Positions 38,693 to 52,519 of a DNA stretch of 64,000 nucleotides are shown piece by piece. Numbering within the stretch: the stretch's first letter is position 1; every line of letters begins with the position of its first letter. The notes beneath the pieces were generated by a model. That model was not told the DNA's origin, did no database searches, and was given only the letters and a program-made list of their open reading frames with translations. Position numbers and translations under genes: made by a program. Location of the stretch: the IMG/VR virus record IMGVR_UViG_3300017917_001342, positions 372,001-436,000 of that record, one strand, 5' to 3'.

Positions 38693-40486
38693 TTACCCAC
38701 CAACTGTAGGTCCTCCTGCTGCCGGTGTACCGGGTGCAGCAAATCCAGCACCCGTGCCTGCTGCTGGCGGTAATTCGCCAGCACCTGGTGGCAATTCACC
38801 TTCTGGCGGTACTTCTTCTTCTGGGCCGCCTTCCAATCCTGGCATAGATGCATCTGGACGTATACCAATAGATGATATACCTGGCGGTTCTGCAACAGAT
38901 TTTGATCCAGTCTTACTACGAACTTTTTCTGCGTTTTCTTCTCGCCACATACGTTCGTTATCTGCAATTTCTTCTTGTGACCAACCAAGATAACGTTCAA
39001 GTGCAAAACGTTTACTAATATAACGATTTGCTTCAGTTGACATAAGTCCACTAAACAACTGTATCTGTTCAGCATCCATTTTCATTTGACGATATTGGCT
39101 AAAGCTCTGTGGCGGACAGAATTGCAATTCAAACAGATTACTTTGTATTTCTATACCGCGATACTTAAGGAACATTTTAAATTCCTTATCAAGTACCGGA
39201 GCCATTAGATTTTGTAAACGTTGGCAATATTTGCTAAAACGATATTCTTGTACAAACGCAATACCAACTTGACCATCATTATAAACAGCAGTACCATCTT
39301 CTGGACCAGTTGGCAAATAGCTACTTGGAATACCTAAACCTCTGATCATTTTGTTGTTGAAGTATTTCAAGTCGTCAATTTGACCTAGATTTTCGCCGCC
39401 ACCTAGCTGTTCAACTTTAGAACCTTTGCCTTCTGCGTTAGTTGCAAGGAAAAAGTCTTCGTTAATGCTAATAGGATTGTAACTAGCATCAATTACGTTT
39501 GCACCACCGCCAGTACGGTTAGGAATACGTCGTTGATAGATTTCGTTTTTAATACGTTCAACATATTGCATAGCACGAGGGCCGCTTAATGAACCAACGT
39601 CAATATAAAACACACGACGATCTGGCGCTCTAACAATGCGGTAAATCAGTATACAATCTTCTAACAGGTCTTTTTGCTTGTAAACCTTGTAGATGCTTTC
39701 AAGAATACTAGTACCAAATGGCCATTGGTTATCCATACCTTCACTAAGGCTAAGATGAACAACGTGAGTTGCATCAACTGCTGTGTCCTGTGGCAAGTTA
39801 TCAAAACGACTTTGTCTAGAACCCGGACTATTGCTAAGACCGTAGTTGATAGTGCCTGCACCTGCTGCGGGGTTCCCACTGCGAGGATAGCCTCCCGGGA
39901 AACTATACTGGTCATGTACCAGCATGTTAGAACCAACCAGACTATTCAAATTGAAATCCATGTCACGGATTACGTATTGTTCGATGCTTTTACCTTTGTC
40001 TTCGTTGACAATGATTTTTTCAACTTTGGTCGGATCTATCCAAATCAATCTAAATGTTTCGGGATCTCTAACGTAGATCTGATCACCGTACTTGATCACA
40101 TTTCGGAACATACGCCATATGCGCTGTTGCCATTTATTAAGGCTACACCACTGGCTTAGTGTGTCAGTTAACAGTTTTATTTCTGTTTCAGTTAGCTTGC
40201 CTTTATAGGAAATTTTAAATGGCTCTTCGTCTGATTCAAAACTCTGAGTGCTAAAATCACTGATAGTGTCTAGTGCGCGACTTATTTCACTATCAAGATC
40301 CATTTGTTCGTATTGTACATAGCGTTCAATACGGTTTGGTGCACCACTGTAAACTTCTGGTAAGTAACTGGCATATTTGCTAGTACTACTAGGCTTGCCG
40401 TCATCGCCACTGTTCCACTGATCAAGTTTGGCTTGTAACCTTGCTTGAGTAGGAACTGCTGAGAAATATTTCTTCCAGGATGCCAT
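38693..40486 (-). CDS. gp20: Portal protein
   Basis: YEQMDLDSEISRALD, LEDCILIYRIVRAPDRRVFYIDVG, EDFFL, DDLKYF, GIPSSYL. Confidence 0.93.
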   Translation of the reverse strand: MASWKKYFSAVPTQARLQAKLDQWNSGDDGKPSSTSKYASYLPEVYSGAPNRIERYVQYEQMDLDSEISRALDTISDFSTQSFESDEEPFKISYKGKLTETEIKLLTDTLSQWCSLNKWQQRIWRMFRNVIKYGDQIYVRDPETFRLIWIDPTKVEKIIVNEDKGKSIEQYVIRDMDFNLNSLVGSNMLVHDQYSFPGGYPRSGNPAAGAGTINYGLSNSPGSRQSRFDNLPQDTAVDATHVVHLSLSEGMDNQWPFGTSILESIYKVYKQKDLLEDCILIYRIVRAPDRRVFYIDVGSLSGPRAMQYVERIKNEIYQRRIPNRTGGGANVIDASYNPISINEDFFLATNAEGKGSKVEQLGGGENLGQIDDLKYFNNKMIRGLGIPSSYLPTGPEDGTAVYNDGQVGIAFVQEYRFSKYCQRLQNLMAPVLDKEFKMFLKYRGIEIQSNLFELQFCPPQSFSQYRQMKMDAEQIQLFSGLMSTEANRYISKRFALERYLGWSQEEIADNERMWREENAEKVRSKTGSKSVAEPPGISSIGIRPDASMPGLEGGPEEEVPPEGELPPGAGELPPAAGTGAGFAAPGTPAAGGPTVGG

Positions 40487-40548: not shown

Positions 40549-42384
40549 TTATATAAGAACACCGCTATTATCATTGATAGCGTGTTTTAATGTTGAAGTT
40601 TGATTATCGATATTGGTATTGAGATTTTTTAATTCTGCAATCATTTTGCCTATATTAAGCAACATTTCTGACATTTGCTGATACGACATATCATGTGTAT
40701 CTCTAAGTGTTGCTACTAATGTTTCTGTATTATCAGTCTGTGTTTTATTAATGTCTCCTGCGGGCGGTATAGTTACTATAGATGATTCTATTGTAGGTGC
40801 AGCAGGTGCAACTGTTCTTGGTAATTCATAATTGATAGGCAAAATATAATCATTGAGATTAATAGGCACTGGTTCAACGGCAGGTATGATGTAATCTCTT
40901 AGATCTATTTCTACTGGTACAACTGTTGGTATTACTTCAAATCCTTGATTAGTTGGAACAGCAGGTTCGTATTCAATTGGCTGTGGAGTAGTTTCAACTG
41001 GTGCAGGAGGTGCTGTTGTAGGTGTTACATCTTGTCTATCACGTGATGTAGCAGGCGGAGTTGGTGTTAAATTTGGCAATACATCAGTACCAAATGTGTC
41101 TTGTAATGATTTGTAAGCAGTGTTAAAGGCCGTGGTCAATATACCAGCCGAATTAGACATTTCTAATAGACCATTACTCAGTGGTATGAGTACATTGGTT
41201 TTTATTTCAGCCGCACCATCAGCTATTATTGCGATGTTGTCTTTGAAATTGTTAAATGCAGCAAGTGCACCAATATCAATACTATTAGTAAGAGTATTAA
41301 CACTGTTGTCAATTTTATTCATATTTTCGATAAAGTCTTTGGTTGCTTGATCGATTGGTGCCAATGGTTTGGTTATATCATCGGCCATCTGATTAGTAGC
41401 CTGAGTGATTGTACCTGCCATTTTTGCCCATGTTTCGTCCTGATATATTTGTAGTTCAGGACTAGCTGATAATGTATCAGCAAGGGTTGTACTAAATTCG
41501 TCAAATTTTCTTACTTTTTCAGCAGGGTCAGTTTCAGATACAGCCGCTGCAAATTCGTCAAGTGTACCCGTGAGTGTTAACATTGTAGAAAAATCGTCAC
41601 TTAGACCAGATATACCTAACGCAGCAAAACCTCTGGCTTCGTTAGTTAACAAATTAAATGCTTCACCTGTTCCGACATTAAATCTAGACAGTGCTCTAAA
41701 GGTTTCATTTAGATTTTCCTGTTGCGCTCTGCTCATTGTGGCATATAAAAATGCACTCTGTGCTTCTTCAGTTTTTGCTTTAATGCTAGCTGCTATTTGT
41801 TCAGTGCTTTTACCTGTTACTTGTGCTGCTTCATTGAGAGATTTTGTAAAACGTACAGAACTGTCGGCTAGCTCTTGTGTAGTGTAACGTTGTGTTGCAC
41901 CTGTTAATGTTAAAATATCTAAATATTGCAGACCGCCATCTTGTAACTCTTCAAGGGTCAGACCAAATGTAGCACCCTGTGAAGATAAGCGTTTAAGGCT
42001 CGCTGCAAATTCGGTTACTGTTGGTATTCCAAGTTTTGCAACAGTTGTCGAATGTTTAGTTAAAAGTTCTGTTAACTTTGGAAATGTAACACCAAATTCA
42101 TCAGCAGTTTGTAGAATTTGATTAGAACTAATAACAATACCAGTTTTGTATAAGTCAGCTATGCTGTCAGTTGCTTGCTGAGCTCTATCACGAGCTTTTA
42201 CAATTAAATCAACTGTAGCAGTCATTGCTATACCAAGGTTTTTAAAGCCAGAATCAAGACCCGAGAAAGTTGACAACATCGATGACGTAGTAGCACTGCC
42301 AACTTTACTTTCTGCTTTAAGACGCTTTGCGACTTCATCCTCGATAAATTTTTTCATCTCGGGGGTCATGATAGGATCTGCCAT
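40549..42384 (-). CDS. Tape-measure-like / gp29-like baseplate hub protein
   Basis: 611-aa A/T/L-rich helical N-part and P/T-rich C-part. Divergent from the gp26-like gene. Confidence 0.5.
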   Translation of the reverse strand: MADPIMTPEMKKFIEDEVAKRLKAESKVGSATTSSMLSTFSGLDSGFKNLGIAMTATVDLIVKARDRAQQATDSIADLYKTGIVISSNQILQTADEFGVTFPKLTELLTKHSTTVAKLGIPTVTEFAASLKRLSSQGATFGLTLEELQDGGLQYLDILTLTGATQRYTTQELADSSVRFTKSLNEAAQVTGKSTEQIAASIKAKTEEAQSAFLYATMSRAQQENLNETFRALSRFNVGTGEAFNLLTNEARGFAALGISGLSDDFSTMLTLTGTLDEFAAAVSETDPAEKVRKFDEFSTTLADTLSASPELQIYQDETWAKMAGTITQATNQMADDITKPLAPIDQATKDFIENMNKIDNSVNTLTNSIDIGALAAFNNFKDNIAIIADGAAEIKTNVLIPLSNGLLEMSNSAGILTTAFNTAYKSLQDTFGTDVLPNLTPTPPATSRDRQDVTPTTAPPAPVETTPQPIEYEPAVPTNQGFEVIPTVVPVEIDLRDYIIPAVEPVPINLNDYILPINYELPRTVAPAAPTIESSIVTIPPAGDINKTQTDNTETLVATLRDTHDMSYQQMSEMLLNIGKMIAELKNLNTNIDNQTSTLKHAINDNSGVLI

Positions 42385-42412
42385 AATTTCTTTAAACCCA
42401 ATTAAAACTGCA

Positions 42413-42431
42413 TTAAATACTAGATATTTAT
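42413..42431. promoter_or_regulatory. Overlapping face-to-face late promoters TTAAATA(+, 42413-42419) and ATAAATA(-, 42425-42431)
   Basis: Located in the 60-bp gap between divergent genes. Confidence 0.55.
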
Positions 42432-42444
42432 TGGAGATTAAATC

Positions 42445-43299
42445 ATGTCAGCTAATCCACTTCAACGGTATTTTCGCAGACCTGCATTATGGGTAAAATT
42501 ACCAACACTAGGCAAATGGTACCAAAACAATGAAGTGCGTTACAATGAAAATTTCGAAGTACAGGTCTATGGCATAACTGCAATAGACGAAATCTTAATC
42601 AATACACCCGACGCACTGTTTAATGGGCATGCATTAGAAAGCGTTATTAGAAGTTGTATACCAGAAGTATATGACATTAAGAGTCTATTACAGCCAGACT
42701 TAGAAGCACTGTTTTTAGGAATCAAATCTGCATCAAGTAACGGAAAATATGAAATCACTAGGACTTGCAAAAAATGTACACATGAAAATACATTTGATTT
42801 AAATTGCAATCATCTTTTAGATAGCATGAGATATCTAGAAGATTCAGATGCTGTAGTCAATGTAGGTAATGATATTAAGGTGCATGTAAAACCTTACGAT
42901 TTCGACATGCGCAGTTTATTCATTAAACGACAACTAGAAGAAAGAAAAACTCTTTCATTAATAGAAAATGACACAGAGATAGACGATAATTTATTGAAAG
43001 CTAGCAAATATGCAAAAAGCTTAGAAGAAATGACTAAATTGACATTTAGGTTGATGTCCGAGTCTATTGTTGCAGTAGAAATTCTAGGCAGAGATGCACA
43101 ATACGTCACTGACAAAGACCATATATCAGAATGGATGTTAAATGTTAATAAGCAAACTGCTAGTTCAATCATAGAGGCAGTTAATGCATTGAACGCATTA
43201 GGTCCCCAAAGGTCCACTACTGCTGTGTGTCAAAATTGCAGTCACACCTGGGAAGAAAGCCTTAATTTTGATCCAACTGTTTTTTTTACGCAACGATAA
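42445..43299 (+). CDS. gp26: Baseplate hub assembly / tail chaperone protein (T4 gp26-like)
   Basis: NPLQRYFRRP...KLPT.G.WY, DLEALF..IKSAS.G, CxxC pairs, ends FDPTVFF. Confidence 0.7.
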   Translation: MSANPLQRYFRRPALWVKLPTLGKWYQNNEVRYNENFEVQVYGITAIDEILINTPDALFNGHALESVIRSCIPEVYDIKSLLQPDLEALFLGIKSASSNGKYEITRTCKKCTHENTFDLNCNHLLDSMRYLEDSDAVVNVGNDIKVHVKPYDFDMRSLFIKRQLEERKTLSLIENDTEIDDNLLKASKYAKSLEEMTKLTFRLMSESIVAVEILGRDAQYVTDKDHISEWMLNVNKQTASSIIEAVNALNALGPQRSTTAVCQNCSHTWEESLNFDPTVFFTQR

Positions 43300-43517
43300 C
43301 AGACTCTGATGTAGAAAAAATAGATAACATGTTAAGACTGTTATCTAGCAATAGAGATGTTATCGAAAATGACATTAACACATTGGTTTATTACATGAAT
43401 GGCGGATTGGATTATAATGATGCCTGGTTACTGACATCTGATCAACGCAAGAACATGTATAATGTCATTCAGAAACACTTCAATGCGATTAATCCTAAAA
43501 ACAAGTCTATGTTATAA
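43287..43517 (+). CDS. -1 frame extension of the gp26-like gene (contains track ORF 43329..43517)
   Basis: Open from the T-run at 43281-43287 through to ATG 43329. No SD before that ATG. YYMNGGLDYNDAWLLT motif. Confidence 0.6.
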   Translation, partial: YATITDSDVEKIDNMLRLLSSNRDVIENDINTLVYYMNGGLDYNDAWLLTSDQRKNMYNVIQKHFNAINPKNKSML

Positions 43518-43529
43518 TTCTATGTTTTG

Positions 43530-43575
43530 TGATGAGCTAAAGCTCATCAGTTATTTGATCTAAAGATCAAATAAC
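43530..43575. repeat. Two abutting perfect palindromes with identical CT-AA-AG centres
   Basis: TGATGAGCT-AA-AGCTCATCA (43530-43549) and GTTATTTGATCT-AA-AGATCAAATAAC (43550-43575). Confidence 0.9.
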
Positions 43576-43612
43576 ATTTTTAATAATTAAAAACTATCAA
43601 TTTATTAAGTAT

Positions 43613-43970
43613 TTCTGGTCGAGTTTGGGATCATATCACTCCCTTACCCAGGGAGTAATAAGATTGTCTTTCTGGTTCGAATGACGACCTGCCCTTTCAT
43701 CCTTGTTCTGCGTGAACAGCTGGCGGAGTACCTAATTCCAGCTTACAGATGTGATCCTCTGAGGAGTCTATACCTCAATACTCGGTTATGGGAGTTTACC
43801 CAAGCTACAGTAAGGTCAAACGGCCAGACCATTACTGCACTACAGAAAGCCAGTCAGACGGCTACTGTAGTCCTTTTTCTGATTTACTTGGCCAGGGCTT
43901 TGCAGTAGAATCCCTGTCAGTGAGTGTGATAACCTTGCCGTTATCCTTTCACTGGATGGAAAACACCATC
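43613..43970 (-). ncRNA. Putative large structured non-coding RNA (family unassigned)
   Basis: At least 9 consecutive stem-loops in a visibly GC-richer intergenic stretch. Several plus-strand A.C mismatches read as G.U on the minus strand. Confidence 0.55.
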
Positions 43971-44038
43971 ATTATGAAGCCAATATACGCGAAAGTTTTA
44001 GTTAATGGGAAATAAAGCAGTGAATACTAAGTGAGATA

Positions 44039-44386
44039 TTAAATTGAGCCTAGTGTTTTTTGAATCTCTTGATCTATAACTTCTGAGAGTTTTGTGCGTT
44101 CTAAAGTAATCATTGCTATGCCTACAACTGACCACAACGCTTGACGTTGTTCGTCAGTTAATTTCTTATACTTATTATCGAGTATCTTATGAAATTCTTC
44201 TTTCATATTATAGCATGGCCCAGCTATAGTACCGTAGTTTACCATTACTGGTTTGCGTTGCCATGGACTTTTTTTAGCTGCTGGTGCTGCTGCGGGTTTA
44301 GCATCAGCGGGGAACCAGTGTTTATCAGCTGATTCAGTAACTGCGTCTTTAGTTGCCTTTGTAGTCTTTTTAATTGCCATTCTCAT
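44039..44386 (-). CDS. Hypothetical protein
   Basis: K/A-rich N-terminus. Last gene of the recombination operon. Start may be ATG 44380. Confidence 0.5.
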   Translation of the reverse strand: MRMAIKKTTKATKDAVTESADKHWFPADAKPAAAPAAKKSPWQRKPVMVNYGTIAGPCYNMKEEFHKILDNKYKKLTDEQRQALWSVVGIAMITLERTKLSEVIDQEIQKTLGSI

Positions 44387-44933
44387 TCTCTGTTACTGTT
44401 ATAGCATTGCTTGCTGTGGTGGTATCTGTCAAATTAGATTTGTTAAAAAAGTGATTTTCTGGTTGAGCCAAGTAATCGTCAAAACTGTGAATGTAGTATT
44501 CTTTGTATCTATTATGAAATTTACCTGTTATAGGCGACTTTAAAAATGTCATAATATCAACGTTGTTGTATTTTACAACAAGCACCATTGCTTTGCCGCT
44601 TGCTGCTGCATCTTGTTCTGCCTGTGAAAGCCAAGTGTCCCATTGTTGAACGCTGTGATTAAGCCAACTCTGTACACTTGGTGCTTTTTTGTAATGTTTA
44701 CACTCGATACTGTAAGTAAAGTCTCTTGGACAAATTAAATCTCCAAAAATTGCATAGTCTAAACTGTAGTTTTCAGTTCTAGTTTTATTGCTGCCTCCGA
44801 AGAAGCTACCACTATCTGGATTGCGTCTAAAACCATTTTTAACACCTAGATGCGATTCAAATCTTGCACTTAATATGTTTGCAATTTTTCTTTCAAATGA
44901 ATTGCCTTTTGCTTTACCATTTACAGCCATCAC
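44370..44933 (-). CDS. Holliday junction resolvase-like PD-(D/E)xK nuclease
   Basis: NGKAKGNSFER, GDLICP, SIECKHY. Confidence 0.75.
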   Translation of the reverse strand: MMAVNGKAKGNSFERKIANILSARFESHLGVKNGFRRNPDSGSFFGGSNKTRTENYSLDYAIFGDLICPRDFTYSIECKHYKKAPSVQSWLNHSVQQWDTWLSQAEQDAAASGKAMVLVVKYNNVDIMTFLKSPITGKFHNRYKEYYIHSFDDYLAQPENHFFNKSNLTDTTTASNAITVTENENGN

Positions 44934-44953
44934 CGTTCCTTTGCTATATTAAA

Positions 44954-46735
44954 TTATATAGCAATCTCGTGGTCATAGCTGAATGAGGTAAATGAATTTT
45001 CTTTTATAACACTTAGAACATTACTAACTCGTGTTATTAATTCTTCTCTATGTGAAATTACAAATACATTTTTGTTTCGTTCTCGCTCCATCTTTTTAAG
45101 TACTGCAACTGAACCTTCTAAACCAGCAGGGTCTAACCCGCTGTCGAGTAATTCGTCAACAAACAATAGATTGACTGCTTGGTTAGTATTTTCAAATATG
45201 TCTCTAAAACTCCAGCTTAGTCCAAGTATTAGTCTTGTGCGTTCACCTCGACTTAGATTGTCGAAATCTAGATCTTGACCTAACAGTGTTATTTCAGTGC
45301 TTAGATCGTTTAGGAATTTAACGTTGTGTGGCAATCCCAATTTGTCTAGGTAGTCATTTAGTCTGCTATTAAGATATGACAGGTTTTGATCAATAATACG
45401 TTTACGTATAAAACTGTCTTTGTTCGTTAGCAGTTTTAGCAAGAACTCCTGATGTTCTCGAGACTTATTAAGACTGTTCAGATGTTCGTAGCTAACAGGT
45501 TGAACAGTGTTTTGCAAACTGTCTACCTGATCTAAATAGGGATTCACTGAATTTTGTTCCCGCTGTAGATCTTTATACAGCGTGTCTACAGTGTTTTTAT
45601 GATTCAATGCTTCTTTCAGTGTTGGGTAAAAAGTTTGAGGTTTAGTCATACTTTCAAACACTGGCAACATTTGATTCAGTTGATCAGTTAGCGTATCTAT
45701 CTCTTTTCGTTCAACTGCAATTTGAGCATCTAAATCACCTATACGCTTTTCCAAGTCACTGACAATATCTTCATGTGTGTGACCTTTGATACCGCTACCA
45801 CACATAGGGCATTGTTTACCTTGTGCAGTAGTGTATTGATTCAATAGCCCATTAAGCTGTGTTTCAAGTTGAGATGCGTGTCTAGTTTTGGTATTGATGT
45901 CCTTGTTAAACTGTGTAATACCTGCATTGAGTTCTTTATACACATCAATGTCATTGTGTGCAGCAAGTTCAGCTTCGATATCCAACGTCTCTAACTGGCC
46001 GATAGCCAGTTTCAACTCTTCTATATCTCGTTGGTTTTTGTTATCCCAGTTTTCAATACGCTGTTGCAATTCTAAAACAGTTTTTTCTATTTTTTCATTT
46101 GCAGTTTTAACAGTTTTGATACGGAACTCTTCTTGATCAATCTGTGTTTTTGTAGTTTTAATTAACTCTTTCAGGTTTTCAGCTTTTTGACTAAGCATGG
46201 TAATGCCTAGCAATTCTTCAATAATTTCTCGCTGTTTACCTGCACCCATTGATAGAAATGGTTCAGTATAGGTATTGAGTGCAACAATGTGTTTAAACAG
46301 TGCATGACTCATACCAATGATTCTGTTGATTTCTTTTTGAGTATCTTTTATTTCGCCTTGTGCTTCATCGGTAGCATTTTCATCTGCTTTGTTTACGTCA
46401 TCAACTATCCAACGAAAGAATTGCGGCTTGCGACCGCGTTCTATTCTATGCAATTTACCGTCAATTTCAAACTCAATACTAACAGCCATGTTCTTGCTGT
46501 TAATCTTGTTTACAAGGTTGTCTTTCTTAATATTGGTAAGTGCATCTCCATAAAGCCCAAAACTAATAGCCTGCAATATAGTGCTTTTACCGACACCGTT
46601 TCTAGATCCATTGCCGCCTAGGTCGAGGTTATCACCTAGTACCAACGTAAGACCATTGCGATCTAATTCAACTGCCTGTGTAACTGCACCAACAGACAGA
46701 AAGTTTTTCATTGAAACATTTTTGATTTTTAACAT
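44954..46735 (-). CDS. gp46: Recombination ATPase (Rad50/SbcC-like)
   Basis: GSRNGVGKST Walker A, CPMC Zn-hook, LSRGE signature, LFVDE Walker B, VISH. Confidence 0.93.
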   Translation of the reverse strand: MLKIKNVSMKNFLSVGAVTQAVELDRNGLTLVLGDNLDLGGNGSRNGVGKSTILQAISFGLYGDALTNIKKDNLVNKINSKNMAVSIEFEIDGKLHRIERGRKPQFFRWIVDDVNKADENATDEAQGEIKDTQKEINRIIGMSHALFKHIVALNTYTEPFLSMGAGKQREIIEELLGITMLSQKAENLKELIKTTKTQIDQEEFRIKTVKTANEKIEKTVLELQQRIENWDNKNQRDIEELKLAIGQLETLDIEAELAAHNDIDVYKELNAGITQFNKDINTKTRHASQLETQLNGLLNQYTTAQGKQCPMCGSGIKGHTHEDIVSDLEKRIGDLDAQIAVERKEIDTLTDQLNQMLPVFESMTKPQTFYPTLKEALNHKNTVDTLYKDLQREQNSVNPYLDQVDSLQNTVQPVSYEHLNSLNKSREHQEFLLKLLTNKDSFIRKRIIDQNLSYLNSRLNDYLDKLGLPHNVKFLNDLSTEITLLGQDLDFDNLSRGERTRLILGLSWSFRDIFENTNQAVNLLFVDELLDSGLDPAGLEGSVAVLKKMERERNKNVFVISHREELITRVSNVLSVIKENSFTSFSYDHEIAI

Positions 46736-46737
46736 GA

Positions 46738-47757
46738 TTAAATGCTCTGATAGATTTCAATTAGCTGTTGCTTATTGATAGTATTGCTTTCGATACTTTT
46801 AAGGTGGCTGATCACAATAGTATCAACACTTTCAAAGTTAATATCATCTGCCGATATTTCACCTATTGCATCAGTTTTAGATACCTGTAGGTTTATTTCT
46901 CTAGCATTGAATTCCTGCTCAAACAGTTCTTTTAAGAAATTTGCTTCTTCGTAAGTAACGTCTACATCTACTGCAATACGTGCAAAGGTTTTGTCGTCTA
47001 AAAACTGTTCGGGATCTTCTAACAAGTGACTCATGTTTATTGTTCTATATTTAGGTGCGTCAGGCCATGACATAAACTTGGGGTCGTCACCGGGCGACCA
47101 AATCATTATACCGCGTTCGTCATCCCAGGCATCTGCATAATTGTGCGGGAAACAGTTACCAGTGTACCATATTTTTCCGCGGTTTTGTCTTTTATGGAAA
47201 TGCCCGCTAAACACTTGTTTTTGATTTACAAAGTGGTTTTCGTTAAGCTGACCGTGGTCTGGCATTTCAACCATTGCGTTCATTTTGAAATGCGGTAATT
47301 CGAAATGTCCAAACATGTAAGGTGCTTTGACTTTTTGTACATGTTTCCAGTCATCGCCTACCATCCAGGGCACAAAACTAACACCGTCTACTTCGGTTAT
47401 AGATTCAATGAGATGAATGTTTGAAAATTCTTTTATGTAGGGAATACTGTGTATTTCGTTTTTATCACGATAAAATTGATCGTGGTTACCTAATATGAAC
47501 CAAGTGTGATCAAAATAACTATTCAGTAATTTGAGACCACTAACAGAATAGTTCAACGTGCTAACGTTGATCGCACTGCGAACATGATGCCAATCCCCGC
47601 CAAAGATGCAATTTTTAATATTGCGTTCTTCTGCTTGTTCAATCATCCATTTGATAAAACGTTCGCAACTGTCGTTGTGATCTCGACTGTTGTTGCGCAT
47701 GCCGTAGTGAATGTCAGTAAAGACTATTGTATTTGAGAAATCTATATCTTTTGTCAT
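46738..47757 (-). CDS. gp47: Recombination nuclease (Mre11/SbcD-like)
   Basis: FTDIH, GGDWHH, GNHD, GHFE, SGHFH. Start likely MTKD at 47757. Confidence 0.92.
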   Translation of the reverse strand: MTKDIDFSNTIVFTDIHYGMRNNSRDHNDSCERFIKWMIEQAEERNIKNCIFGGDWHHVRSAINVSTLNYSVSGLKLLNSYFDHTWFILGNHDQFYRDKNEIHSIPYIKEFSNIHLIESITEVDGVSFVPWMVGDDWKHVQKVKAPYMFGHFELPHFKMNAMVEMPDHGQLNENHFVNQKQVFSGHFHKRQNRGKIWYTGNCFPHNYADAWDDERGIMIWSPGDDPKFMSWPDAPKYRTINMSHLLEDPEQFLDDKTFARIAVDVDVTYEEANFLKELFEQEFNAREINLQVSKTDAIGEISADDINFESVDTIVISHLKSIESNTINKQQLIEIYQSI

Positions 47758-47799
47758 ACAACAGCATACGGTACAGCATGCTTGCAATCAACCATGTAG

Positions 47800-48666
47800 T
47801 TAGTCTTTGTCTACACTATCTTCTTTAGCCTGTTCTTTGGCAAGTGATTCTGCATGCTGTGCAGCCATACGAATCATGTCATGTTCGGTTTGTCTTGTGT
47901 AGCTAGGAGTTGCACCGTTCATAATCAGTATGTCGTCTCTGATGTTTTGATTGCGCTTTTCTATGTTAAGCACTCTTGTAAAGCTGTTGGTTATTGCGGC
48001 GGTGTAATACGCAAATGGATTTGGAGTATCAGAACGGCTTTCATCAAATTGTAACCCAATTTGGCTTAGTTGAAGCAGTGCCTGGCTTTTCATTTCGTCT
48101 ATGTATGTGTAACCTCGCCAGTTGCCTCTGTGACCATAGCGTTCTACTAATTTCATAAACATCATAGCCAGTCTATTAGTCATTTTTCCGTGCGAGTTAG
48201 AAAAATGTCCGTTATGTAATCCACCTGTCCAATGGCTTTTACCTACACATATAAATTCGCTGTCACCGTAGATAAAATGCTGAAAAGGTGGAAAATTACA
48301 CTTTACATGCCTATCTGCTTCAGTTTTGGCTTTGGCTAATTTTTCTTCATTTATAGGTATATGATCAAATGTCATTACTCGAATTACAATGTCTGATCGT
48401 TGTACATCGTCTAATGTATAATTGATAACAGGATTTCTTATACCAGCCGCAATTTGCGCTTTTTTCTCTGCTGCAATGTATAAATCTACTTTGCGTTGTC
48501 TTGCTTCATCAATACGTTCAACAGTAACGTCATTTATATCAGATACTATGAAATCGTAATTGGAATACTTAGATTCTAAATATTCACAGTACGTGGTTTT
48601 ACTGCGATGAATTTCTTCTAGCAACTCTTTATTAGTTAGGTATTTTATTTTTGGTATTGCTGCCAT
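47800..48666 (-). CDS. gp55: Late-transcription sigma factor
   Basis: NWRGYTYIDEMKSQALLQL, NPFAYYTAAITNSF.RVLNIEK. Confidence 0.85.
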   Translation of the reverse strand: MAAIPKIKYLTNKELLEEIHRSKTTYCEYLESKYSNYDFIVSDINDVTVERIDEARQRKVDLYIAAEKKAQIAAGIRNPVINYTLDDVQRSDIVIRVMTFDHIPINEEKLAKAKTEADRHVKCNFPPFQHFIYGDSEFICVGKSHWTGGLHNGHFSNSHGKMTNRLAMMFMKLVERYGHRGNWRGYTYIDEMKSQALLQLSQIGLQFDESRSDTPNPFAYYTAAITNSFTRVLNIEKRNQNIRDDILIMNGATPSYTRQTEHDMIRMAAQHAESLAKEQAKEDSVDKD

Positions 48667-48750
48667 ATTAGATTATCCAATTGTTTACTGTAAACATATA
48701 ACTTTGCATAATTTTTACCAATGAAGTCAAATAACAACACAAATTAGGCA

Positions 48751-48802
48751 TATTTATTTTACATTTCTTTCTATTTTTGAAGAAAAAATGCCACCATAAA
48801 TA
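48751..48802. promoter_or_regulatory. Divergent late promoters ATAAATA (-, 48751-48757) and ATAAATA (+, 48796-48802)
   Basis: Intergenic between gp55 and the baseplate module. Confidence 0.55.
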
Positions 48803-48822
48803 GTAAGTACGGAGTTTTATCA

Positions 48823-49662
48823 ATGGCAGACATGTATTCACAAATGGGCGGAGGGTTAGTACCTTTCACAGGTATGCAATCACCTGACACAAGCAACAAC
48901 AGTGATGCACAGGGTCGTCGAGTAAGGTTGCGACCCAAACCTGCTGCTGCGATGCAAATATACGGATCAAATGGTTTATTACAGCCTTTGAGACAAACCA
49001 ATGGAATGGTATGGCCGTATCAACCTACTATAACATGGAACCAGCCTGTTACATATAGTGGGATGGAATTGGTTCATACCAACCAGGATATCATGGCATA
49101 TGTTGCGACACCGACACCTAAATTCAATGTCGCTGGAGATTTTAGTGTACAGAATCAACAAGAAGGTGTATATGCATTAGCAGCTATACATTTTTTACGT
49201 ACTGTTACTAAGATGCATTTTGGTTCGTCTGACCCAAATGCTGGTACACCACCACCTGTGTTACTGTTTGATGCATACGGACAGTACATGTTCAATCAAT
49301 TGCCTGTGATTGTTACTAACTTTTCAATTGGATTACCACAAGATGTTGATTATGTACCAGTTGATTTAAAATACGTACAATCATATACGTCTGCGCAGAC
49401 TGCAACTAACATACCAGGGTTTAGTCAATTACAAACAACTCCGTCTATAGATAGTTTTTTAAATTCTGCTAACTCTACATTAATTTCGACTAGAATGTAC
49501 AGGTCAGATTTGTCAACTGAAAATAATCGCTATATATGGTTACCAGCAGTGTTTACAGTAAACGTGGATATTGCAGTACAAAACACTGCGACTCGACTGC
49601 GTGCATTTAATCTAAACAGTTTTAGATCTGGAGAACTTATGAAACAAGGACGATGGATATGA
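48823..49662 (+). CDS. Baseplate tail-tube cap/initiator-like protein (gp48/gp54-like)
   Basis: GMVWPYQPTI, IHFLRTVTKMHFG, PPPV..FDAYGQYMFNQLPVIVTNF...P.DVDY. Confidence 0.65.
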   Translation: MADMYSQMGGGLVPFTGMQSPDTSNNSDAQGRRVRLRPKPAAAMQIYGSNGLLQPLRQTNGMVWPYQPTITWNQPVTYSGMELVHTNQDIMAYVATPTPKFNVAGDFSVQNQQEGVYALAAIHFLRTVTKMHFGSSDPNAGTPPPVLLFDAYGQYMFNQLPVIVTNFSIGLPQDVDYVPVDLKYVQSYTSAQTATNIPGFSQLQTTPSIDSFLNSANSTLISTRMYRSDLSTENNRYIWLPAVFTVNVDIAVQNTATRLRAFNLNSFRSGELMKQGRWI

Positions 49663-49967
49663 GTGCTGTCATTTATCAAAAGACTAGTCCGTATTTTAAT
49701 ACACCACAAGTCAATCAATATGTCAATTATTTAGATTTTTGGAATGGTACGTACATTTTTCCAAAAGACACAGATTTGTTTATGCAACTTGATGCGCAAT
49801 ATCAATATAGGCCAGATCTATTATCTTATGCACAATACGGCACACCACAATTGTGGTGGATATTCATGCTACGAAATCCAAACGTGATTAAAGATCCGGT
49901 TTGGGATTTTGTTGCAAACATTTCTATATATGTGCCACAAAAGAGTTCGTTAATTGGATTGGTATAA
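49653..49967 (+). CDS. gp53: Baseplate wedge LysM-like protein
   Basis: YQYRPDLLSY..YGTPQLWWIF.LRNP..IKDP. Confidence 0.75.
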   Translation: MDMSAVIYQKTSPYFNTPQVNQYVNYLDFWNGTYIFPKDTDLFMQLDAQYQYRPDLLSYAQYGTPQLWWIFMLRNPNVIKDPVWDFVANISIYVPQKSSLIGLV

Positions 49968-49972
49968 AATAA

Positions 49973-52519
49973 ATGTCTAACAATCTATTAAATCTTATTA
50001 ACACTATCAAACCAATTTTACCAATTAAATTGGATACCAACATTACGGTTAATAATATTTTAACGCCTGTAATTGATGAATTTACACAATCAGCACAAGC
50101 GGCAATAGATCCATTTAAAAAATTATTAACACCGTTGCAGCTTCAAGCTGATAATTTTCCATTCATTAACAAAAATAAAACCTACACATCATTGGGTGAT
50201 TTGTTTAATGCAAAACCGAATCCACTAAATGATTATGCAAATTACACATATCATATTAGATTTAGTATGTCAAATGAAGTACAAGCATACAACAACATTA
50301 ACAAATTATCACCTAATACTGATAATTTAACAAAAGTAATAATTGCAGAATCTGGTGTCACTGCTGGTTTTAACATTCAATCTCTTAATATAACTACCAA
50401 AGCTACAAGCGATGGCCGTAGTAGAGGCATGTGGACCAATGCTACATATACAATGGAAATTCTAGAACCGTTAGGCATAACATTAATTGATAAACTCTAT
50501 AATTCAGCAAGAGAATTAGGCGCTATCAACTATGTCACATGTCCTTACTTTTTAGAAGTGTGGTATAATGGCTATGACGAAAACGGTAATATCATAGCTA
50601 ATAATTTGTTTTATAATTTGTACAGAGTGATCATAAGAGATATCAATGCAAATTCTGACAATGTTGGCACACGATATGTAGTGACAATGATAAATGACAA
50701 TGGTTATGCAGAATTAAACACAATGGCTACACCACCGTCTAACATTATCATTCCTGCTGCAACACTAGGTGAATTTTTTGATCAGTTGCAAGTTGCTTGG
50801 AATACAATGTCAAGTAATATAAACGCTGATGGTATACAACGTAACAACTACAAAATTGAATATCCGGCCGAATGGCGATCATGGACACTGAAAAACCCAG
50901 ACGCACTGAAACAAAACTCCCGCGGTACTCCGATGTACGCCGAACTGAACAGTAACAAAACCACTGTTACTATTTCTCGAGGTCAAAGTATAGAAGTTGT
51001 AATTGAATTTATACTGTATCTATGTCAAGAAGCCCAACTATGGATGACTGGTAGTGATTCACCGTCGCCTGGTGCACCAAGTTTAAAAAGTCACGGGTTG
51101 ATTAGATACATTACCATTTATCCTCAAAGTGAAATAGTTGCAGCGACACCTCATGACCCTGTGACATTGGATTACATTAGAAATATCACATATTCTCTTA
51201 TACCAACTGAAACAGTTAAAGCATATGTAGATATGGAAACTGTTAAACGTGCAAGTACACCAACTGTAGCTGAAAACAAATTGAGATACATGATATCCAA
51301 TAACAGATTAGCTAAAAAATACGAGTACATTTACACAGGCAAAAATACAGAAGTAATTAAATTTGATTTTACCATTAACAATTTATGGAAGATTACACAG
51401 CCAAATTGGTTACAAAGTAACAGCTATGACCAATATACTGTCGGGCCTGTTGCAGCAACAGAAAGTATTGGCTGGCAACAAATAAAACAGGTTCTTAACA
51501 GAACTAAACTAAATCCATCCAGCCTAATTCAAGCTGTAGACAACCTGTCATCAATATTAACTATTGGTACTAATCTAAACATCAATTCGTTAATAAATGG
51601 TGCTCAGCAGATTATACCTACCATAAACAATGTTGCGAATTTAATCAATAATATACCATCTACAACTGCTGATATATCTAAATTATTAAGCAATAACACA
51701 CTGTTTTTGAATTTCAACACCGGCGATATTACTAAATCAACTGTTGCAAATTTAGTAAACAATACTTTACCTAATACTGTGTCAACTCAATTGCAGTTGT
51801 CGAATGTCAAGTATGCCGAAGATTTAATCAGACCTTCTGGTACTCTTGTTACACCATTGGTGCCTGTTGTTGGTCAATTCGACACAGCGCCAACTCAACA
51901 GCAGGCCAGACAAAACACAGATCAAAACAAAGTTGTATCAAATCCGGATCCTAACAAATACGAACCCGGTACTGGTATAATGGGCAGTATTTTAAACAAC
52001 GTGTTTGAGCCAAACAAAGCATTTGCAAATATCGAATTAATAATCAGAGGTGACCCATGGTGGGTTTCAAAAAGCAATTTAATACAAAACAACATTGTAA
52101 AAAACATTGTTGGGGGTTCAGCTGTTGCTAACACAGATACACAAAGCGCAAACTTTTTAGGCGGTGATAACGAAATTCTGTTAGAGTTCAGAACTGGCGT
52201 AACTATTAATGAAGATACTGGATTAGGCGAATTCAGTAATACTGGATCTGATTTCTTTTCTGGATTGTATTATGTGTCTAATGTTGTAAGCAACTTCAAC
52301 CGAGGTAAATTTACTCAAACTCTATATTGCAAAAAGGATGTGTTGTTTAACACAGAGGTATTAGCTACATCTGGTAGTCCTACTACGTCTAGAGACCGTC
52401 AAGATTTTACACCAATGTCGGTTTCTACATCTCGCGATAGACAGGATACAGCACTAGTACCAACTGCGTCAATTGGTAACAACACCGTGGCGCCTACAGT
52501 ATCTAGAGACAGGCAGTGA
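49973..52519 (+). CDS. Baseplate hub (gp27-like) protein
   Basis: Lies between gp53 and gp5. EILEPLG, IELIIRGDPWW, SGLYYV..V.SNFNRGKFTQTL. Confidence 0.6.
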   Translation: MSNNLLNLINTIKPILPIKLDTNITVNNILTPVIDEFTQSAQAAIDPFKKLLTPLQLQADNFPFINKNKTYTSLGDLFNAKPNPLNDYANYTYHIRFSMSNEVQAYNNINKLSPNTDNLTKVIIAESGVTAGFNIQSLNITTKATSDGRSRGMWTNATYTMEILEPLGITLIDKLYNSARELGAINYVTCPYFLEVWYNGYDENGNIIANNLFYNLYRVIIRDINANSDNVGTRYVVTMINDNGYAELNTMATPPSNIIIPAATLGEFFDQLQVAWNTMSSNINADGIQRNNYKIEYPAEWRSWTLKNPDALKQNSRGTPMYAELNSNKTTVTISRGQSIEVVIEFILYLCQEAQLWMTGSDSPSPGAPSLKSHGLIRYITIYPQSEIVAATPHDPVTLDYIRNITYSLIPTETVKAYVDMETVKRASTPTVAENKLRYMISNNRLAKKYEYIYTGKNTEVIKFDFTINNLWKITQPNWLQSNSYDQYTVGPVAATESIGWQQIKQVLNRTKLNPSSLIQAVDNLSSILTIGTNLNINSLINGAQQIIPTINNVANLINNIPSTTADISKLLSNNTLFLNFNTGDITKSTVANLVNNTLPNTVSTQLQLSNVKYAEDLIRPSGTLVTPLVPVVGQFDTAPTQQQARQNTDQNKVVSNPDPNKYEPGTGIMGSILNNVFEPNKAFANIELIIRGDPWWVSKSNLIQNNIVKNIVGGSAVANTDTQSANFLGGDNEILLEFRTGVTINEDTGLGEFSNTGSDFFSGLYYVSNVVSNFNRGKFTQTLYCKKDVLFNTEVLATSGSPTTSRDRQDFTPMSVSTSRDRQDTALVPTASIGNNTVAPTVSRDRQ

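What the first reader, a model, noticed from the sequence alone, without database searches (positions are those of the whole stretch)
41029..52516. Shared linear motif (T/V)SRDRQ(D) in two unrelated tail proteins
Seen: three copies in the C-terminal tail of the gp27-like hub (52385-52405, 52427-52447, 52499-52516, the last ending the protein) and one in the P/T-rich part of the tape-measure-like protein (41029-41049, minus strand). Codons differ between copies (tct aga gac cgt caa / tct cgc gat aga cag / tct aga gac agg cag / tca cgt gat aga caa), so selection acts at the peptide level. Inference: an undescribed docking, protease-recognition or modification tag for tail proteins ejected into the host.
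Basis: partly seen in the sequence, partly recalled or inferred. Interest (0 to 1): 0.62.

Follow-up and report, generated by a model that had tools for sequence, protein, structure and literature searches.

The report
Conserved SRDRQ peptide on phage tail hub
A five-residue peptide, SRDRQ, sits three times on the floppy end of the central tail-hub protein of a half-megabase uncultivated phage and once in its tape-measure protein. Selection clearly keeps it, and it probably works as a docking tag at the tail tip, but what it binds is still unknown.

Summary
(T/V)SRDRQ(D) lies at the stated coordinates with different codons. SRDRQ occurs four times in the six-frame translation of the whole 518,643-bp genome, only in these two proteins (0.05 expected in long ORFs).

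The 848-aa protein has the gp27/Mu gp44/VgrG hub fold. The 611-aa protein is an all-helical tape-measure-like protein.

In the hub the motif is old and selected. RDRQ occurs 39 times in 29 of 120 homologues (0.41 expected), always as [TN][SN]RDRQ. It always lies in one of three predicted disordered segments: N-arm, internal loop or C-tail. Gains and losses recur on the tree.

The tape-measure copy is young. Only this phage and one 65%-identical relative have it. It lies in a disordered P/T-rich linker and belongs to a roughly 25-residue stretch resembling the start of the hub tail.

The variation S/N and T/N/V/A argues against Ser/Thr modification. Conserved tandem and terminal copies argue against a simple cleavage site.

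My best reading is a multivalent docking peptide at the hub-spike-tape-measure junction. No partner was found, and the single complex prediction gave no answer.

It is a real, undescribed short linear motif of unknown mechanism. Interest is moderate.

The parts
49973..52519 (+). Gene of the gp27-like central hub protein (P0001, 848 aa).
   Evidence: The AF2 model has mean pLDDT 76. Foldseek and VIA-align match the central hubs of phi812, T4 gp27 (1k28_D, Z 10.9, model 88-792 against chain 4-363), Mu gp44, pyocin R2 hub and VgrG. PHROG 11190, virion structural protein. The gene lies between a gp53-like gene and a gp5-like gene.
49973..50185 (+). Disordered N-terminal arm of the hub (aa 1-71). 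In clade B relatives this arm carries TNRDRQS or YNRDRQ about 10 residues before the fold begins.
   Evidence: pLDDT is below 50 for residues 1-71. N-arm motif copies are at aa 55-80 of P0021, 22, 25, 27, 29, 33, 34 and 41.
51557..51802 (+). Low-confidence internal segment of the hub (aa 529-610). In clade C relatives the equivalent loop carries NNRDRQ or TSRDRQD.
   Evidence: pLDDT is below 50 for 529-587 and 596-610. Internal copies are at aa 585-616 of P0051, 52, 53, 58 and 63.
52373..52516 (+). Disordered, P/T/S-rich C-terminal tail of the hub (aa 801-848) carrying the three motif copies.
   Evidence: pLDDT is 37-39 for residues 801-848. All 120 homologues have a variable tail of 5-68 residues after the conserved G-K-F-T-Q...K-D-V-L end of the fold.
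52385..52405 (+). Motif copy 1, TSRDRQD (hub aa 805-811).
52427..52447 (+). Motif copy 2, TSRDRQD (hub aa 819-825).
52499..52516 (+). Motif copy 3, VSRDRQ, the last six residues of the hub. The stop codon is at 52517-52519.
   Evidence: The hubs P0001, P0003, P0005-P0008 and P0015 (seven proteins) end exactly in SRDRQ.
52346..52414 (+). Hub side of the roughly 25-residue stretch shared with the tape-measure-like protein (aa 792-814: F-N-T-E-V-L, linker, TSRDRQD-F-T-P).
   Evidence: BLASTP gives 15 of 25 identical, E 2e-6 for the single comparison. The DNA of the two stretches aligns only loosely (61% mean column identity over the four sequences aligned), so this is not a recent gene conversion.
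40549..42384 (-). Gene of the tape-measure-like protein (P0002, 611 aa).
   Evidence: No Pfam or PHROG hit of its own. The AF2 model is all helical apart from one long coil. Distant homologues found by an exhaustive search weakly hit the tape-measure PHROGs 305, 1272 and 5493. The gene lies between the gp20 portal gene and a divergent gp26-like hub gene, an arrangement kept in L001, L002, L004 and L085.
40753..41091 (-). Disordered P/T/V/E-rich linker of the tape-measure-like protein (aa 432-544).
   Evidence: DSSP coil with pLDDT 26-36. Relatives at 22-25% identity have a Gly/Ala-rich hydrophobic segment here instead.
41029..41049 (-). Motif copy in the tape-measure-like protein, TSRDRQD (aa 446-452).
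   Evidence: It is kept in P0123 inside a perfectly conserved 15-residue block, TSRDRQDVTPTTAPP.
41020..41094 (-). Tape-measure side of the shared stretch of about 25 residues (aa 431-455: F-G-T-D-V-L, linker, TSRDRQD-V-T-P).
40573..40752 (-). Long C-terminal helix of the tape-measure-like protein (aa 545-604). It is the most conserved part of the family and probably the piece that plugs into the hub cavity.
   Evidence: Helix 545-604 in the model. The C-terminal L-N-T-N-I-x-x-Q-T-x-x-L-K block is conserved. In Mu and phiTE the tape-measure C-terminus binds the hub inner wall and the spike (PMC11915804; PMC11972413).
52589..55987 (+). Context: gp5-like spike protein (1132 aa), a candidate partner. 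Its N-terminal 230 residues are far better conserved than the hub.
   Evidence: Pfam Phage_base_V at aa 29-75 and Phage_lysozyme at aa 983-1114; PHROG 13211. The N-terminus is 73-77% identical in relatives whose hub is about 50% identical.
42445..43299 (+). Context: gp26-like baseplate hub protein (284 aa), divergent from the tape-measure gene. A candidate assembly partner; not tested.
   Evidence: Pfam PF12322 T4_baseplate, E 2.7e-13; PHROG 150.

Best explanation
[T/N][S/N]-R-D-R-Q, followed by D, S, N or the chain end, is a selected short linear motif carried on disordered arms of the gp27-like central hub of a clade of uncultivated giant T4-like phages.

In this phage three copies sit on a 48-residue P/T/S-rich C-terminal tail. 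That tail starts where the hub fold ends. [quoted passage not shown]

A fourth copy sits on a 113-residue disordered linker of the tape-measure-like protein. It lies about 90 residues upstream of the C-terminal helix (aa 545-604) that should plug into the hub cavity.

I propose that the motif is a multivalent docking peptide. Each copy would bind the same, still unidentified, site at or inside the hub-spike cavity, or on a hub-assembly factor acting there. This would tether the flexible hub arms and, in this lineage, the tape-measure linker while the hub is built, and hold the plug until the tail fires.

The tape-measure copy most likely arose when a stretch of about 25 residues resembling the start of the hub tail was copied into the tape-measure linker.

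Shown here: the motif is real and non-random, selection acts on the peptide, it lies in predicted disorder, it has moved among three arms of the hub, and the hub and tape-measure identities hold.

Inferred: that it binds something, where that site is, and what the binding achieves.
For: - Enrichment: 4 SRDRQ in the genome, only in these two proteins, against 0.05 expected. RDRQ occurs 39 times in 29 of 120 hub homologues against 0.41 expected.
- Specificity: in 1.14 Mb of related loci, [STN][SN]RDRQ occurs only in hub ORFs.
- Peptide-level selection: motif codons vary freely, including switches between the AGR and CGN Arg codon families.
- Disorder: the hub model is disordered at 1-71, 529-610 and 801-848. 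These are the only three places where relatives carry the motif. The tape-measure copy lies in a coil with pLDDT 26-36.
- Position independence: on a tree of 65 hubs the C-tail, N-arm and internal states need at least 11 changes, and each protein carries the motif in one region only. This is how docking motifs typically evolve.
- Multivalency is kept: there are 1-3 copies with variable linkers. The three-copy layout with the same spacing is kept in P0001, P0003 and P0007, and P0007 lies in another subclade.
- Location: the model aligns to the whole gp27/gp44/VgrG N-module up to residue 792. In Mu, the hub C-terminal domain contacts the spike N-terminus and the tape-measure C-terminus and seals the channel (PMC11915804). 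In phiTE, the tape-measure C-terminal fragment packs against the hub inner wall and the puncture apparatus (PMC11972413).
- Against Ser/Thr modification: positions -1 (S/N) and -2 (T/N/V/A) vary while R-D-R-Q does not.
Against: - No partner is known. The one complex prediction (hub core 72-800, gp5-like 1-200 and tail 803-848) scored 0.00, which the tool rates as no answer.
- The AF2 monomer did not dock the tail on its own core.
- Many hub homologues of 35-50% identity lack RDRQ altogether.
- Within one tight cluster the C-terminal pentapeptide switches between SRDRQ, ARVGQ, PRIGPQ and IVGPQ. That is unexpected for a contact with a strongly conserved virion partner.
- The motif is wholly polar and charged, with no hydrophobic anchor, which is unusual for peptide-domain docking.
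- The tape-measure copy is known from only two lineages, so selection on that copy is weakly documented.
Confidence: 0.4

Rival explanations
1. Processing site. The motif marks where a protease, or an autocatalytic reaction, cuts after Gln. The mature hub would then end in ...SRDRQ. The tape measure would split into a long N-terminal body and a C-terminal fragment of about 160 residues that stays in the hub cavity.
For: - In phiTE the tape measure is six-fold in the tube but three-fold at its C-terminus, with no connecting density. The authors infer cleavage and cite lambda gpH and T5 (PMC11972413).
- Here the motif lies in the disordered linker between the helical body and the C-terminal helix.
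- Seven hub homologues have their stop codon directly after the Q. Cutting after Q in the others would give all of them the same mature end.
- Every non-terminal copy in clade A is followed by Asp, as a P1' preference would require.
- Disordered loops are also where proteases cut.
Against: - Copies downstream of the first would be removed by the first cut, yet two- and three-copy layouts are conserved.
- A terminal copy has nothing to remove.
- P0040 and L011 end in NNRDRQN, one residue past Q.
- An N-arm copy would remove about 80 residues, and an internal copy would nick the hub.
- From my own knowledge, no phage tail-morphogenesis protease with Gln at P1 is known, and the T4 gp21-type prohead protease, whose homologue lies at 35489-36133, cuts after Glu.
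Confidence: 0.2
2. Host-capture box. The disordered arms at the tail tip enter the periplasm on contraction. The motif then binds a host envelope or periplasmic component, as the short Tol and Ton boxes in the disordered translocation domains of colicins do.
For: - The motif sits on flexible arms of the two proteins that lie at, or leave through, the tail tip.
- It is gained, lost and swapped for other short terminal motifs between very close relatives (SRDRQ against R[VI]GPQ at core branch lengths of 0.03-0.13). That is the tempo expected of host-interaction surfaces.
- Copy number and position do not matter.
Against: - The host is unknown and nothing here tests ejection.
- The same core is kept across hubs that are only 32-40% identical to this one, from many different metagenomes.
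- Tail proteins need not be exposed as free peptides.
- The colicin analogy rests on my own knowledge, not on a test.
Confidence: 0.17
3. Modification tag. A phage or host enzyme modifies a residue of the motif, for example by Ser/Thr phosphorylation or glycosylation, Arg ADP-ribosylation, or Gln deamidation, methylation or cross-linking.
For: - The core R-D-R-Q is invariant and lies in accessible disorder.
- Many hub tails end in Q (SRDRQ, R[VI]GPQ, GHQ, GGQ), so the terminal Gln may matter.
Against: - Ser at -1 alternates with Asn, and Thr at -2 with Asn, Val or Ala, so Ser/Thr chemistry is not conserved.
- I identified no candidate enzyme.
- A modification would not explain why several copies per chain are kept.
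Confidence: 0.05
4. The tape-measure copy is a passenger. The hub motif is functional, but the tape-measure copy is just a recently copied piece of hub-tail-like sequence in a tolerant P/T-rich linker, with no function of its own. The sharing between two tail proteins would then carry no meaning.
For: - Only two tape-measure lineages carry it.
- P0124, which also has a P/T-rich linker, and all tape measures of the Gly/Ala-rich type lack it.
- The similarity extends over about 25 residues, as expected of a copied segment.
- Between the window and L085 the motif codons differ at one synonymous site only.
Against: - The DNA of the hub and tape-measure stretches aligns only loosely, while the seven motif residues are identical.
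- In P0123 (65% identical overall) the 15-residue block around the motif is perfectly kept between indel-bearing, variable flanks.
- The recipient is the one protein that meets the hub's C-terminal domain in solved tails.
Confidence: 0.1

Closest known systems
Central hub-spike-tape-measure junction of contractile tails (T4 gp27/gp5/gp29; Mu gp44/gp45/gp42; phiTE hub/puncture apparatus/TMP)
   Same: - P0001 has the gp27/gp44 fold over residues 88-792.
- It is followed by a gp5-like gene with an OB domain.
- P0002 is an all-helical tape-measure-like protein with a conserved C-terminal helix.
- In Mu and phiTE the hub C-terminal domain, the spike N-terminus and the tape-measure C-terminus form one tight contact that seals the tube (PMC11915804; PMC11972413).
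   Different: - The papers I read describe contacts between folded elements, and I found no report of this motif on a hub or a tape measure.
- P0001 is more than twice the size of T4 gp27. It has a 71-residue N-arm, an 80-residue low-confidence insert and a 48-residue tail.
C-terminal extensions of T6SS VgrG spikes that recruit effectors or adaptor proteins (from my own knowledge; not tested here)
   Same: - The N-module has the same fold (VgrG chains match at Z 8-9.6).
- In both, a variable C-terminal extension on a conserved hub/spike scaffold could serve as a recruitment handle.
   Different: - In VgrG the gp27-like module continues into the gp5-like OB domain and beta-helix, and the recruiting part comes after that. 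Here the hub and spike are separate genes, and the tail follows the gp27-like module directly.
- No cargo is known here.
Short Tol and Ton boxes in the disordered translocation domains of colicins (from my own knowledge; not tested here)
   Same: Short conserved peptides are embedded in long, low-complexity, disordered segments of a protein that must cross the envelope. Their position is flexible and there can be several boxes per chain.
   Different: - The sequences differ.
- The colicin boxes have known partners (TolB, TonB, porins).
- Here there is no evidence of exposure to the periplasm and no known host.
Proteolytic processing of tape-measure proteins (lambda gpH, T5 pb2; inferred for phiTE)
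   Same: A disordered or unresolved connection separates the tape-measure body from a C-terminal fragment lodged in the tip (PMC11972413). The motif in P0002 lies in just such a linker.
   Different: - The paper I read names no cleavage sequence for those phages, and I did not look further.
- The hub protein is not known to be processed in them.
- Tandem and terminal copies do not fit a plain cleavage site.

Membership tests
gp27-like central baseplate hub (T4 gp27 / Mu gp44 / VgrG N-module) | Fold made of tube-like beta-barrel domains plus a C-terminal alpha/beta domain | tested here: met
   AF2 model pLDDT 76. Foldseek probability 1.0 to phi812, T4 gp27, Mu gp44 and VgrG. VIA-align Z 10-12.8 over model residues 83-805 against the whole N-module of the targets.
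gp27-like central baseplate hub (T4 gp27 / Mu gp44 / VgrG N-module) | Sequence membership in a curated hub family | tested here: not met
   No Pfam family. A profile of 120 homologues finds no solved structure by sequence. Only PHROG 11190, 'virion structural protein'. It is a hub by fold and gene context, not by a sequence family.
gp27-like central baseplate hub (T4 gp27 / Mu gp44 / VgrG N-module) | Gene next to the spike gene (gp5-like, OB domain) within a baseplate module | tested here: met
   The order gp53-like, hub, gp5-like, gp25-like, gp6-like holds in the window and in L001, L002, L004 and L005.
gp27-like central baseplate hub (T4 gp27 / Mu gp44 / VgrG N-module) | Trimer at the centre of the baseplate | not testable with these tools
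   This needs particles or a trimer model.
Tail tape-measure protein | Long, almost wholly alpha-helical protein | tested here: met
   AF2 and DSSP give helices over 8-431 and 545-604 and a coil over 432-544. Confidence is low (pLDDT 53).
Tail tape-measure protein | Sequence match to tape-measure families | tested here: inconclusive
   P0002 itself matches nothing in Pfam, PHROGs, PDB or INPHARED. Distant homologues from the exhaustive search hit the tape-measure PHROGs 305, 1272 and 5493 at E 4e-7 to 3e-4.
Tail tape-measure protein | Length proportional to tail length; located in the tube lumen | not testable with these tools
   There are no particles. At 611 residues it is close to T4 gp29 in size (from my own knowledge).
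Short linear motif (docking type) | 3-10 residues, in an intrinsically disordered region | tested here: met
   The core is 4-7 residues. All copies lie in segments with pLDDT below 50.
Short linear motif (docking type) | A conserved island in fast-evolving flanks, selected at the peptide level | tested here: met
   Tails vary in length (5-68 residues) and sequence while R-D-R-Q is invariant. Synonymous codons vary.
Short linear motif (docking type) | Repeated gain, loss or relocation within a protein family | tested here: met
   Three alternative sites and at least 11 state changes on the tree of 65 hubs.
Short linear motif (docking type) | A defined binding partner | tested here: inconclusive
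   One complex job (hub core, gp5-like N-terminus and tail) scored 0.00, which is no answer. gp26-like, gp53-like, the 279-aa protein, tube proteins and host proteins were not tested.
Protease processing site | Mature chain termini at the motif | not testable with these tools
   This needs mass spectrometry of particles or of expressed complexes.

The most novel reading that the evidence does not exclude
The disordered arms of these giant-phage hubs may carry an interchangeable set of short peptide signals. Candidates are SRDRQ, terminal R[VI]GPQ, DRVGFDTT repeats and terminal GY[AV][AF]GA. Once the tail tip is in the periplasm, these would be read by host envelope or periplasmic proteins, in the way colicin boxes are read. 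Alternatively they would direct cutting and release of the hub-tape-measure plug. Swapping signals would then retune host range or firing. The tape measure of this phage would have borrowed the hub's signal to be handled by the same reader.
Probability: 0.12. Interest if true: 0.8.

Novelty: new variant of a known kind. Interest (0 to 1): 0.55.

Why it matters
It is poorly understood how the hub, spike and tape measure are put together, and how that plug is released when a contractile tail fires. The open questions include why tape measures appear to be cut in some myophages.

This finding offers a short, strongly selected and position-independent peptide. It sits on the flexible arms of the hub and, in one lineage, on the tape-measure linker. 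That makes it a concrete handle: a 15-20-residue peptide can be used as bait, mutated, or looked for in maps.

It also shows that the disordered arms of giant-phage hubs carry selected signals of this kind and, possibly, others. Structural work usually does not resolve such arms and annotation pipelines ignore them.

If the reader of the motif is a host protein, it would be a new type of phage-host contact. If it is a virion or assembly protein, it would explain how a three-fold hub recruits its partners.

Tried and rejected
- Complex prediction: hub core 72-800, gp5-like N-terminus 1-200 and hub tail 803-848, with my own alignments for the first two chains. The score was 0.00 in both runs and the controls were not run. 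The tool calls this no answer, neither for nor against.
- Self-docking: the AF2 monomer left the tail at pLDDT 37-39. This gives no hint either way for a trimer.
- Literature: a full-text search for SRDRQ found four unrelated papers on immunology and insects.
- Sequence searches of solved structures with the hub profile, the 279-aa protein, the gp26-like protein and P0002 found nothing meaningful.
- P0002 against cultured phages by tblastn gave no match. The hub's best cultured relatives are PA5oct-like, Atu_ph07 and Phosso at 24-27% identity, aligned over residues 76-546 only and not over the tail; their tails were not inspected.
- Co-occurrence test: I asked whether the tape measure carries the motif wherever the hub does. 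It does not. The tape measures in L001, L002 and L004 lack it although their hubs have it. The contigs of P0034 and P0052 (N-arm and internal-loop types) could not be read because no DNA was held.
- Another carrier in a relative whose hub lacks the motif: all 13 DNA-pattern hits in the 216-kb record G001 are either AGY (Ser) codons or fall in short off-frame ORFs.
- RDRQ hits judged to be chance: QRDRQD in a DNA-ligase-like ORF; an off-frame 57-codon ORF inside the gp55-like gene of L001-L003; off-frame ORFs in high-GC loci; ATRDRQL in the gp5-like protein of L063, which was not followed up.
- A DNA- or RNA-level cause is rejected, because the codons differ and the two stretches align only loosely at the DNA level.
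- Partner search by correlated changes in gp5-like or other neighbours: considered and not run. There are too few independent contrasts and they are confounded with phylogeny.

Full report
**What is there**

The window is bases 372001-436000 of a single 518,643-bp virus record with 40.7% G+C. The region around the finding is a T4-like structural and replication block. It holds:
- major head protein, a gp21-like prohead protease and the gp20 portal (38693-40486, - strand);
- the 611-aa ORF P0002 (40549-42384, - strand);
- a divergent gp26-like hub gene (42445-43299);
- gp46/gp47-like nuclease genes and a gp55-like late sigma factor;
- a 279-aa virion protein and a gp53-like gene (49653-49967);
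- the 848-aa ORF P0001 (49973-52519);
- a gp5-like spike gene (52589-55987), gp25-like and gp6-like genes, and a giant ORF that runs off the window.

**Is it more than chance?**

SRDRQ occurs four times in the six-frame translation of the whole genome, and only at these four places. ORFs of 100 or more codons hold 203,351 residues, in which 0.05 SRDRQ and 0.0002 TSRDRQD are expected.

As a control I listed every 6-mer that the hub shares with any other long ORF. There are four others, all in unrelated contexts. Sharing a hexamer is therefore ordinary. Sharing this particular repeated word with this particular protein is not.

The only other in-frame RDRQ in a long ORF lies inside a folded DNA-ligase-like protein. 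I take it as chance.

**What the two proteins are**

With an alignment of 120 homologues, AlphaFold2 models P0001 at mean pLDDT 76. Residues 72-528 and 611-800 are folded. Residues 1-71, 529-610 and 801-848 fall below pLDDT 50.

Foldseek and VIA-align match the model over residues 83-805 to the complete N-module of central hubs. The matches include T4 gp27 (Z 10.9, chain 4-363), Mu gp44, pyocin R2 hub, phi812 hub, A-1(L), T5 pb3 and VgrG. No curated sequence family matches. P0001 is thus a gp27-like hub by fold and gene context.

P0002 has no family hit of its own. Several observations nevertheless make 'tape-measure-like' reasonable, though it is less firmly shown than the hub identity:
- It is predicted helical over 8-431, coil over 432-544 and one long helix over 545-604.
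- Its distant homologues from an exhaustive search weakly hit tape-measure PHROGs.
- Its position beside a gp26-like gene is conserved.

**The motif in the hub family**

Among the 120 hub homologues, which are 25-84% identical to P0001, RDRQ occurs 39 times in 29 proteins against 0.41 expected. It always appears as [TN][SN]RDRQ. It is followed by D (19 times), S, N, A or G, or by the end of the chain (7 times).

It always lies in one of the three predicted disordered segments, and in one segment only per protein:
- the C-tail in the clade closest to this phage (49-84% identity; 15 of 19 members, with 1-3 copies);
- the N-arm, about 10 residues before the fold begins, in a clade at about 40% identity;
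- the internal loop in a clade at about 33% identity.

One protein of the middle clade, P0040, ends in NNRDRQN.

On a tree of 65 core sequences, built without the C-terminal tails, these states need at least 11 changes.

In 1.14 Mb of related loci the motif occurs in hub ORFs only. In a 216-kb relative whose hub lacks it, no protein has it.

The codons vary freely. The first Arg uses five different codons from both Arg codon families.

The linkers between copies are P/T/S-rich and variable. The three-copy layout with the same spacing is nevertheless kept in P0001, P0003 and the more distant P0007.

This is the behaviour of a selected short linear motif. It is short, lies in disorder, forms an island of conservation, does not depend on position and is often multivalent.

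**The motif in the tape-measure-like protein**

Here the picture differs. Two word-based searches and one exhaustive search found only two lineages with the motif: this phage (with a 99% variant) and P0123 at 65% identity. P0123 comes from the same sequencing run as the 80%-identical hub P0004, so the two probably belong to one sister phage.

Tape measures next to motif-bearing hubs in L001, L002 and L004 lack the motif. In its place they have a Gly/Ala-rich hydrophobic segment. P0124 also has a P/T-rich linker but no motif.

In P0123 a 15-residue block, TSRDRQDVTPTTAPP, is perfectly kept between variable flanks.

The similarity to the hub is wider than the motif. From F-x-T-[ED]-V-L through a P/T linker to TSRDRQD-[FV]-TP, 15 of 25 residues are identical (E 2e-6 for the single comparison). 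The DNA of the two stretches aligns only loosely.

I read this as an old copy of a hub-tail-like segment placed into the tape-measure linker and since kept at the peptide level. With only two lineages, selection on this copy is not firmly shown.

**How it most likely works**

The hub fold ends at residue 792. In VgrG, the chain continues at that point into the gp5-like OB domain.

In Mu, the hub C-terminal domain is pulled inward by contacts with the spike N-terminus and the tape-measure C-terminus. The three proteins seal the channel together (PMC11915804). In phiTE, the tape-measure C-terminal helices pack against the hub inner wall and the puncture apparatus (PMC11972413).

The hub tail of this phage therefore starts at the hub-spike-tape-measure junction. 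The tape-measure linker lies just above the helix that should sit there.

My best explanation (confidence 0.4) is that the motif is a multivalent docking peptide. It would bind one common site at or in that cavity, or on an assembly factor acting there.

Two features speak against Ser/Thr modification and a plain cleavage site:
- S/N and T/N/V/A vary next to an invariant R-D-R-Q.
- Tandem copies and terminal copies are conserved.

**What weakens it**

- No partner is known.
- Many homologues lack the motif.
- In one tight cluster the last five residues switch between SRDRQ, ARVGQ, PRIGPQ and IVGPQ. P0004 carries two TSRDRQD copies and also a terminal RIIGPQ. The tails therefore look like strings of interchangeable short signals.
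- Such rapid turnover suits a host-facing role (rival, 0.17) at least as well as a contact with the very conserved gp5-like N-terminus, which is 73-77% identical where the hub is about 50% identical.
- The processing rival (0.2) gains from the phiTE evidence for tape-measure cleavage and from the seven hubs whose stop codon follows the Q directly.

**Comparison with what is known, and novelty**

The scaffold proteins are ordinary members, by fold, of the hub and tape-measure classes. The motif itself is not described in the literature I could search. It is absent from the cultured relatives that could be aligned.

It works like known flexible-arm recruitment devices, such as VgrG C-terminal extensions and colicin boxes. 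Those comparisons rest on my own knowledge. It cannot be filed in any family.

I rate it a new variant of a known kind, with interest 0.55. It is real, selected and testable with a peptide, but its mechanism is open.

Noticed in passing
window 52589-55987 (+): The gp5-like spike protein (1132 aa) has the OB domain at its N-terminus (aa 29-75) but its lysozyme domain at the extreme C-terminus (aa 983-1114). T4 gp5, by contrast, has the lysozyme between the OB domain and the beta-helix (from my own knowledge). One relative also shows a faint VgrG-type DUF2345 hit. The layout resembles an 'evolved VgrG' carrying a C-terminal effector.
   Followed up: partly
L001:319-2325(-), L002:341-2344(-), L004:220-2235(-) compared with window 40753-41091(-): The tape-measure family comes in two forms. 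Most members have a Gly/Ala-rich hydrophobic segment (up to 70% G+A over 40 residues) before the C-terminal helix. P0002, P0123 and P0124 have a Pro/Thr-rich linker there instead. The swap may change how the tape measure behaves at the membrane.
   Followed up: partly
L005:3-1643(-): In this relative the gp55-like late sigma factor carries an insertion of about 330 residues. It starts with Cys right after G-N-W-R-G-Y and ends ...T-G-N before T-Y-I-D-E-M, where the homology to the window's gene (47800-48666) resumes. These are intein-like boundaries. Pfam finds no domain.
   Followed up: partly
hub homologues P0038 and P0039 (N-arm); P0009-P0012, P0004, P0053, P0058 (C-end); P0016, P0018-P0020 (C-end); P0021, P0025, P0029, P0030, P0032-P0034 (C-end): Other short conserved peptides sit on the same disordered arms. 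There are three repeats of [ND]-[ND]-R-V-G-F-D-T-T in the N-arm, terminal R-[VI]-G-P-Q and related endings in Q, terminal P-S-D-R-R, and terminal G-Y-[AV]-[AF]-G-A preceded by D-P-[IV]-Q-N-F-E-Q. They may be alternative signals read by the same or by other partners.
   Followed up: no
window 40831-40905 (-): Downstream of the motif the tape-measure linker holds two copies of a 10-residue peptide, D-L-R-D-Y-I-I-P-A-V and N-L-N-D-Y-I-L-P-I-N, 15 residues apart. Both are kept in P0123.
   Followed up: no
window 59888-64000 (+), running off the window: A giant ORF follows the gp6-like gene. Its counterparts in relatives are 3,669-3,718 residues long. The 1,370 residues inside the window have no Pfam hit. 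It sits where gp7 would in a T4-like baseplate module.
   Followed up: no
L063:12060-15137 (+): In a distant relative (hub 25% identical) the gp5-like protein has A-T-R-D-R-Q-L at residue 421 of the ORF. This is probably chance. It would be worth a look if the motif turns out to move between baseplate proteins.
   Followed up: no
genome 73411-74775 (-), outside the window: A DNA-ligase-like ORF with a K-L-D-G-V-R adenylation motif holds Q-R-D-R-Q-D inside a hydrophobic, evidently folded context. I take it as a chance match.
   Followed up: yes
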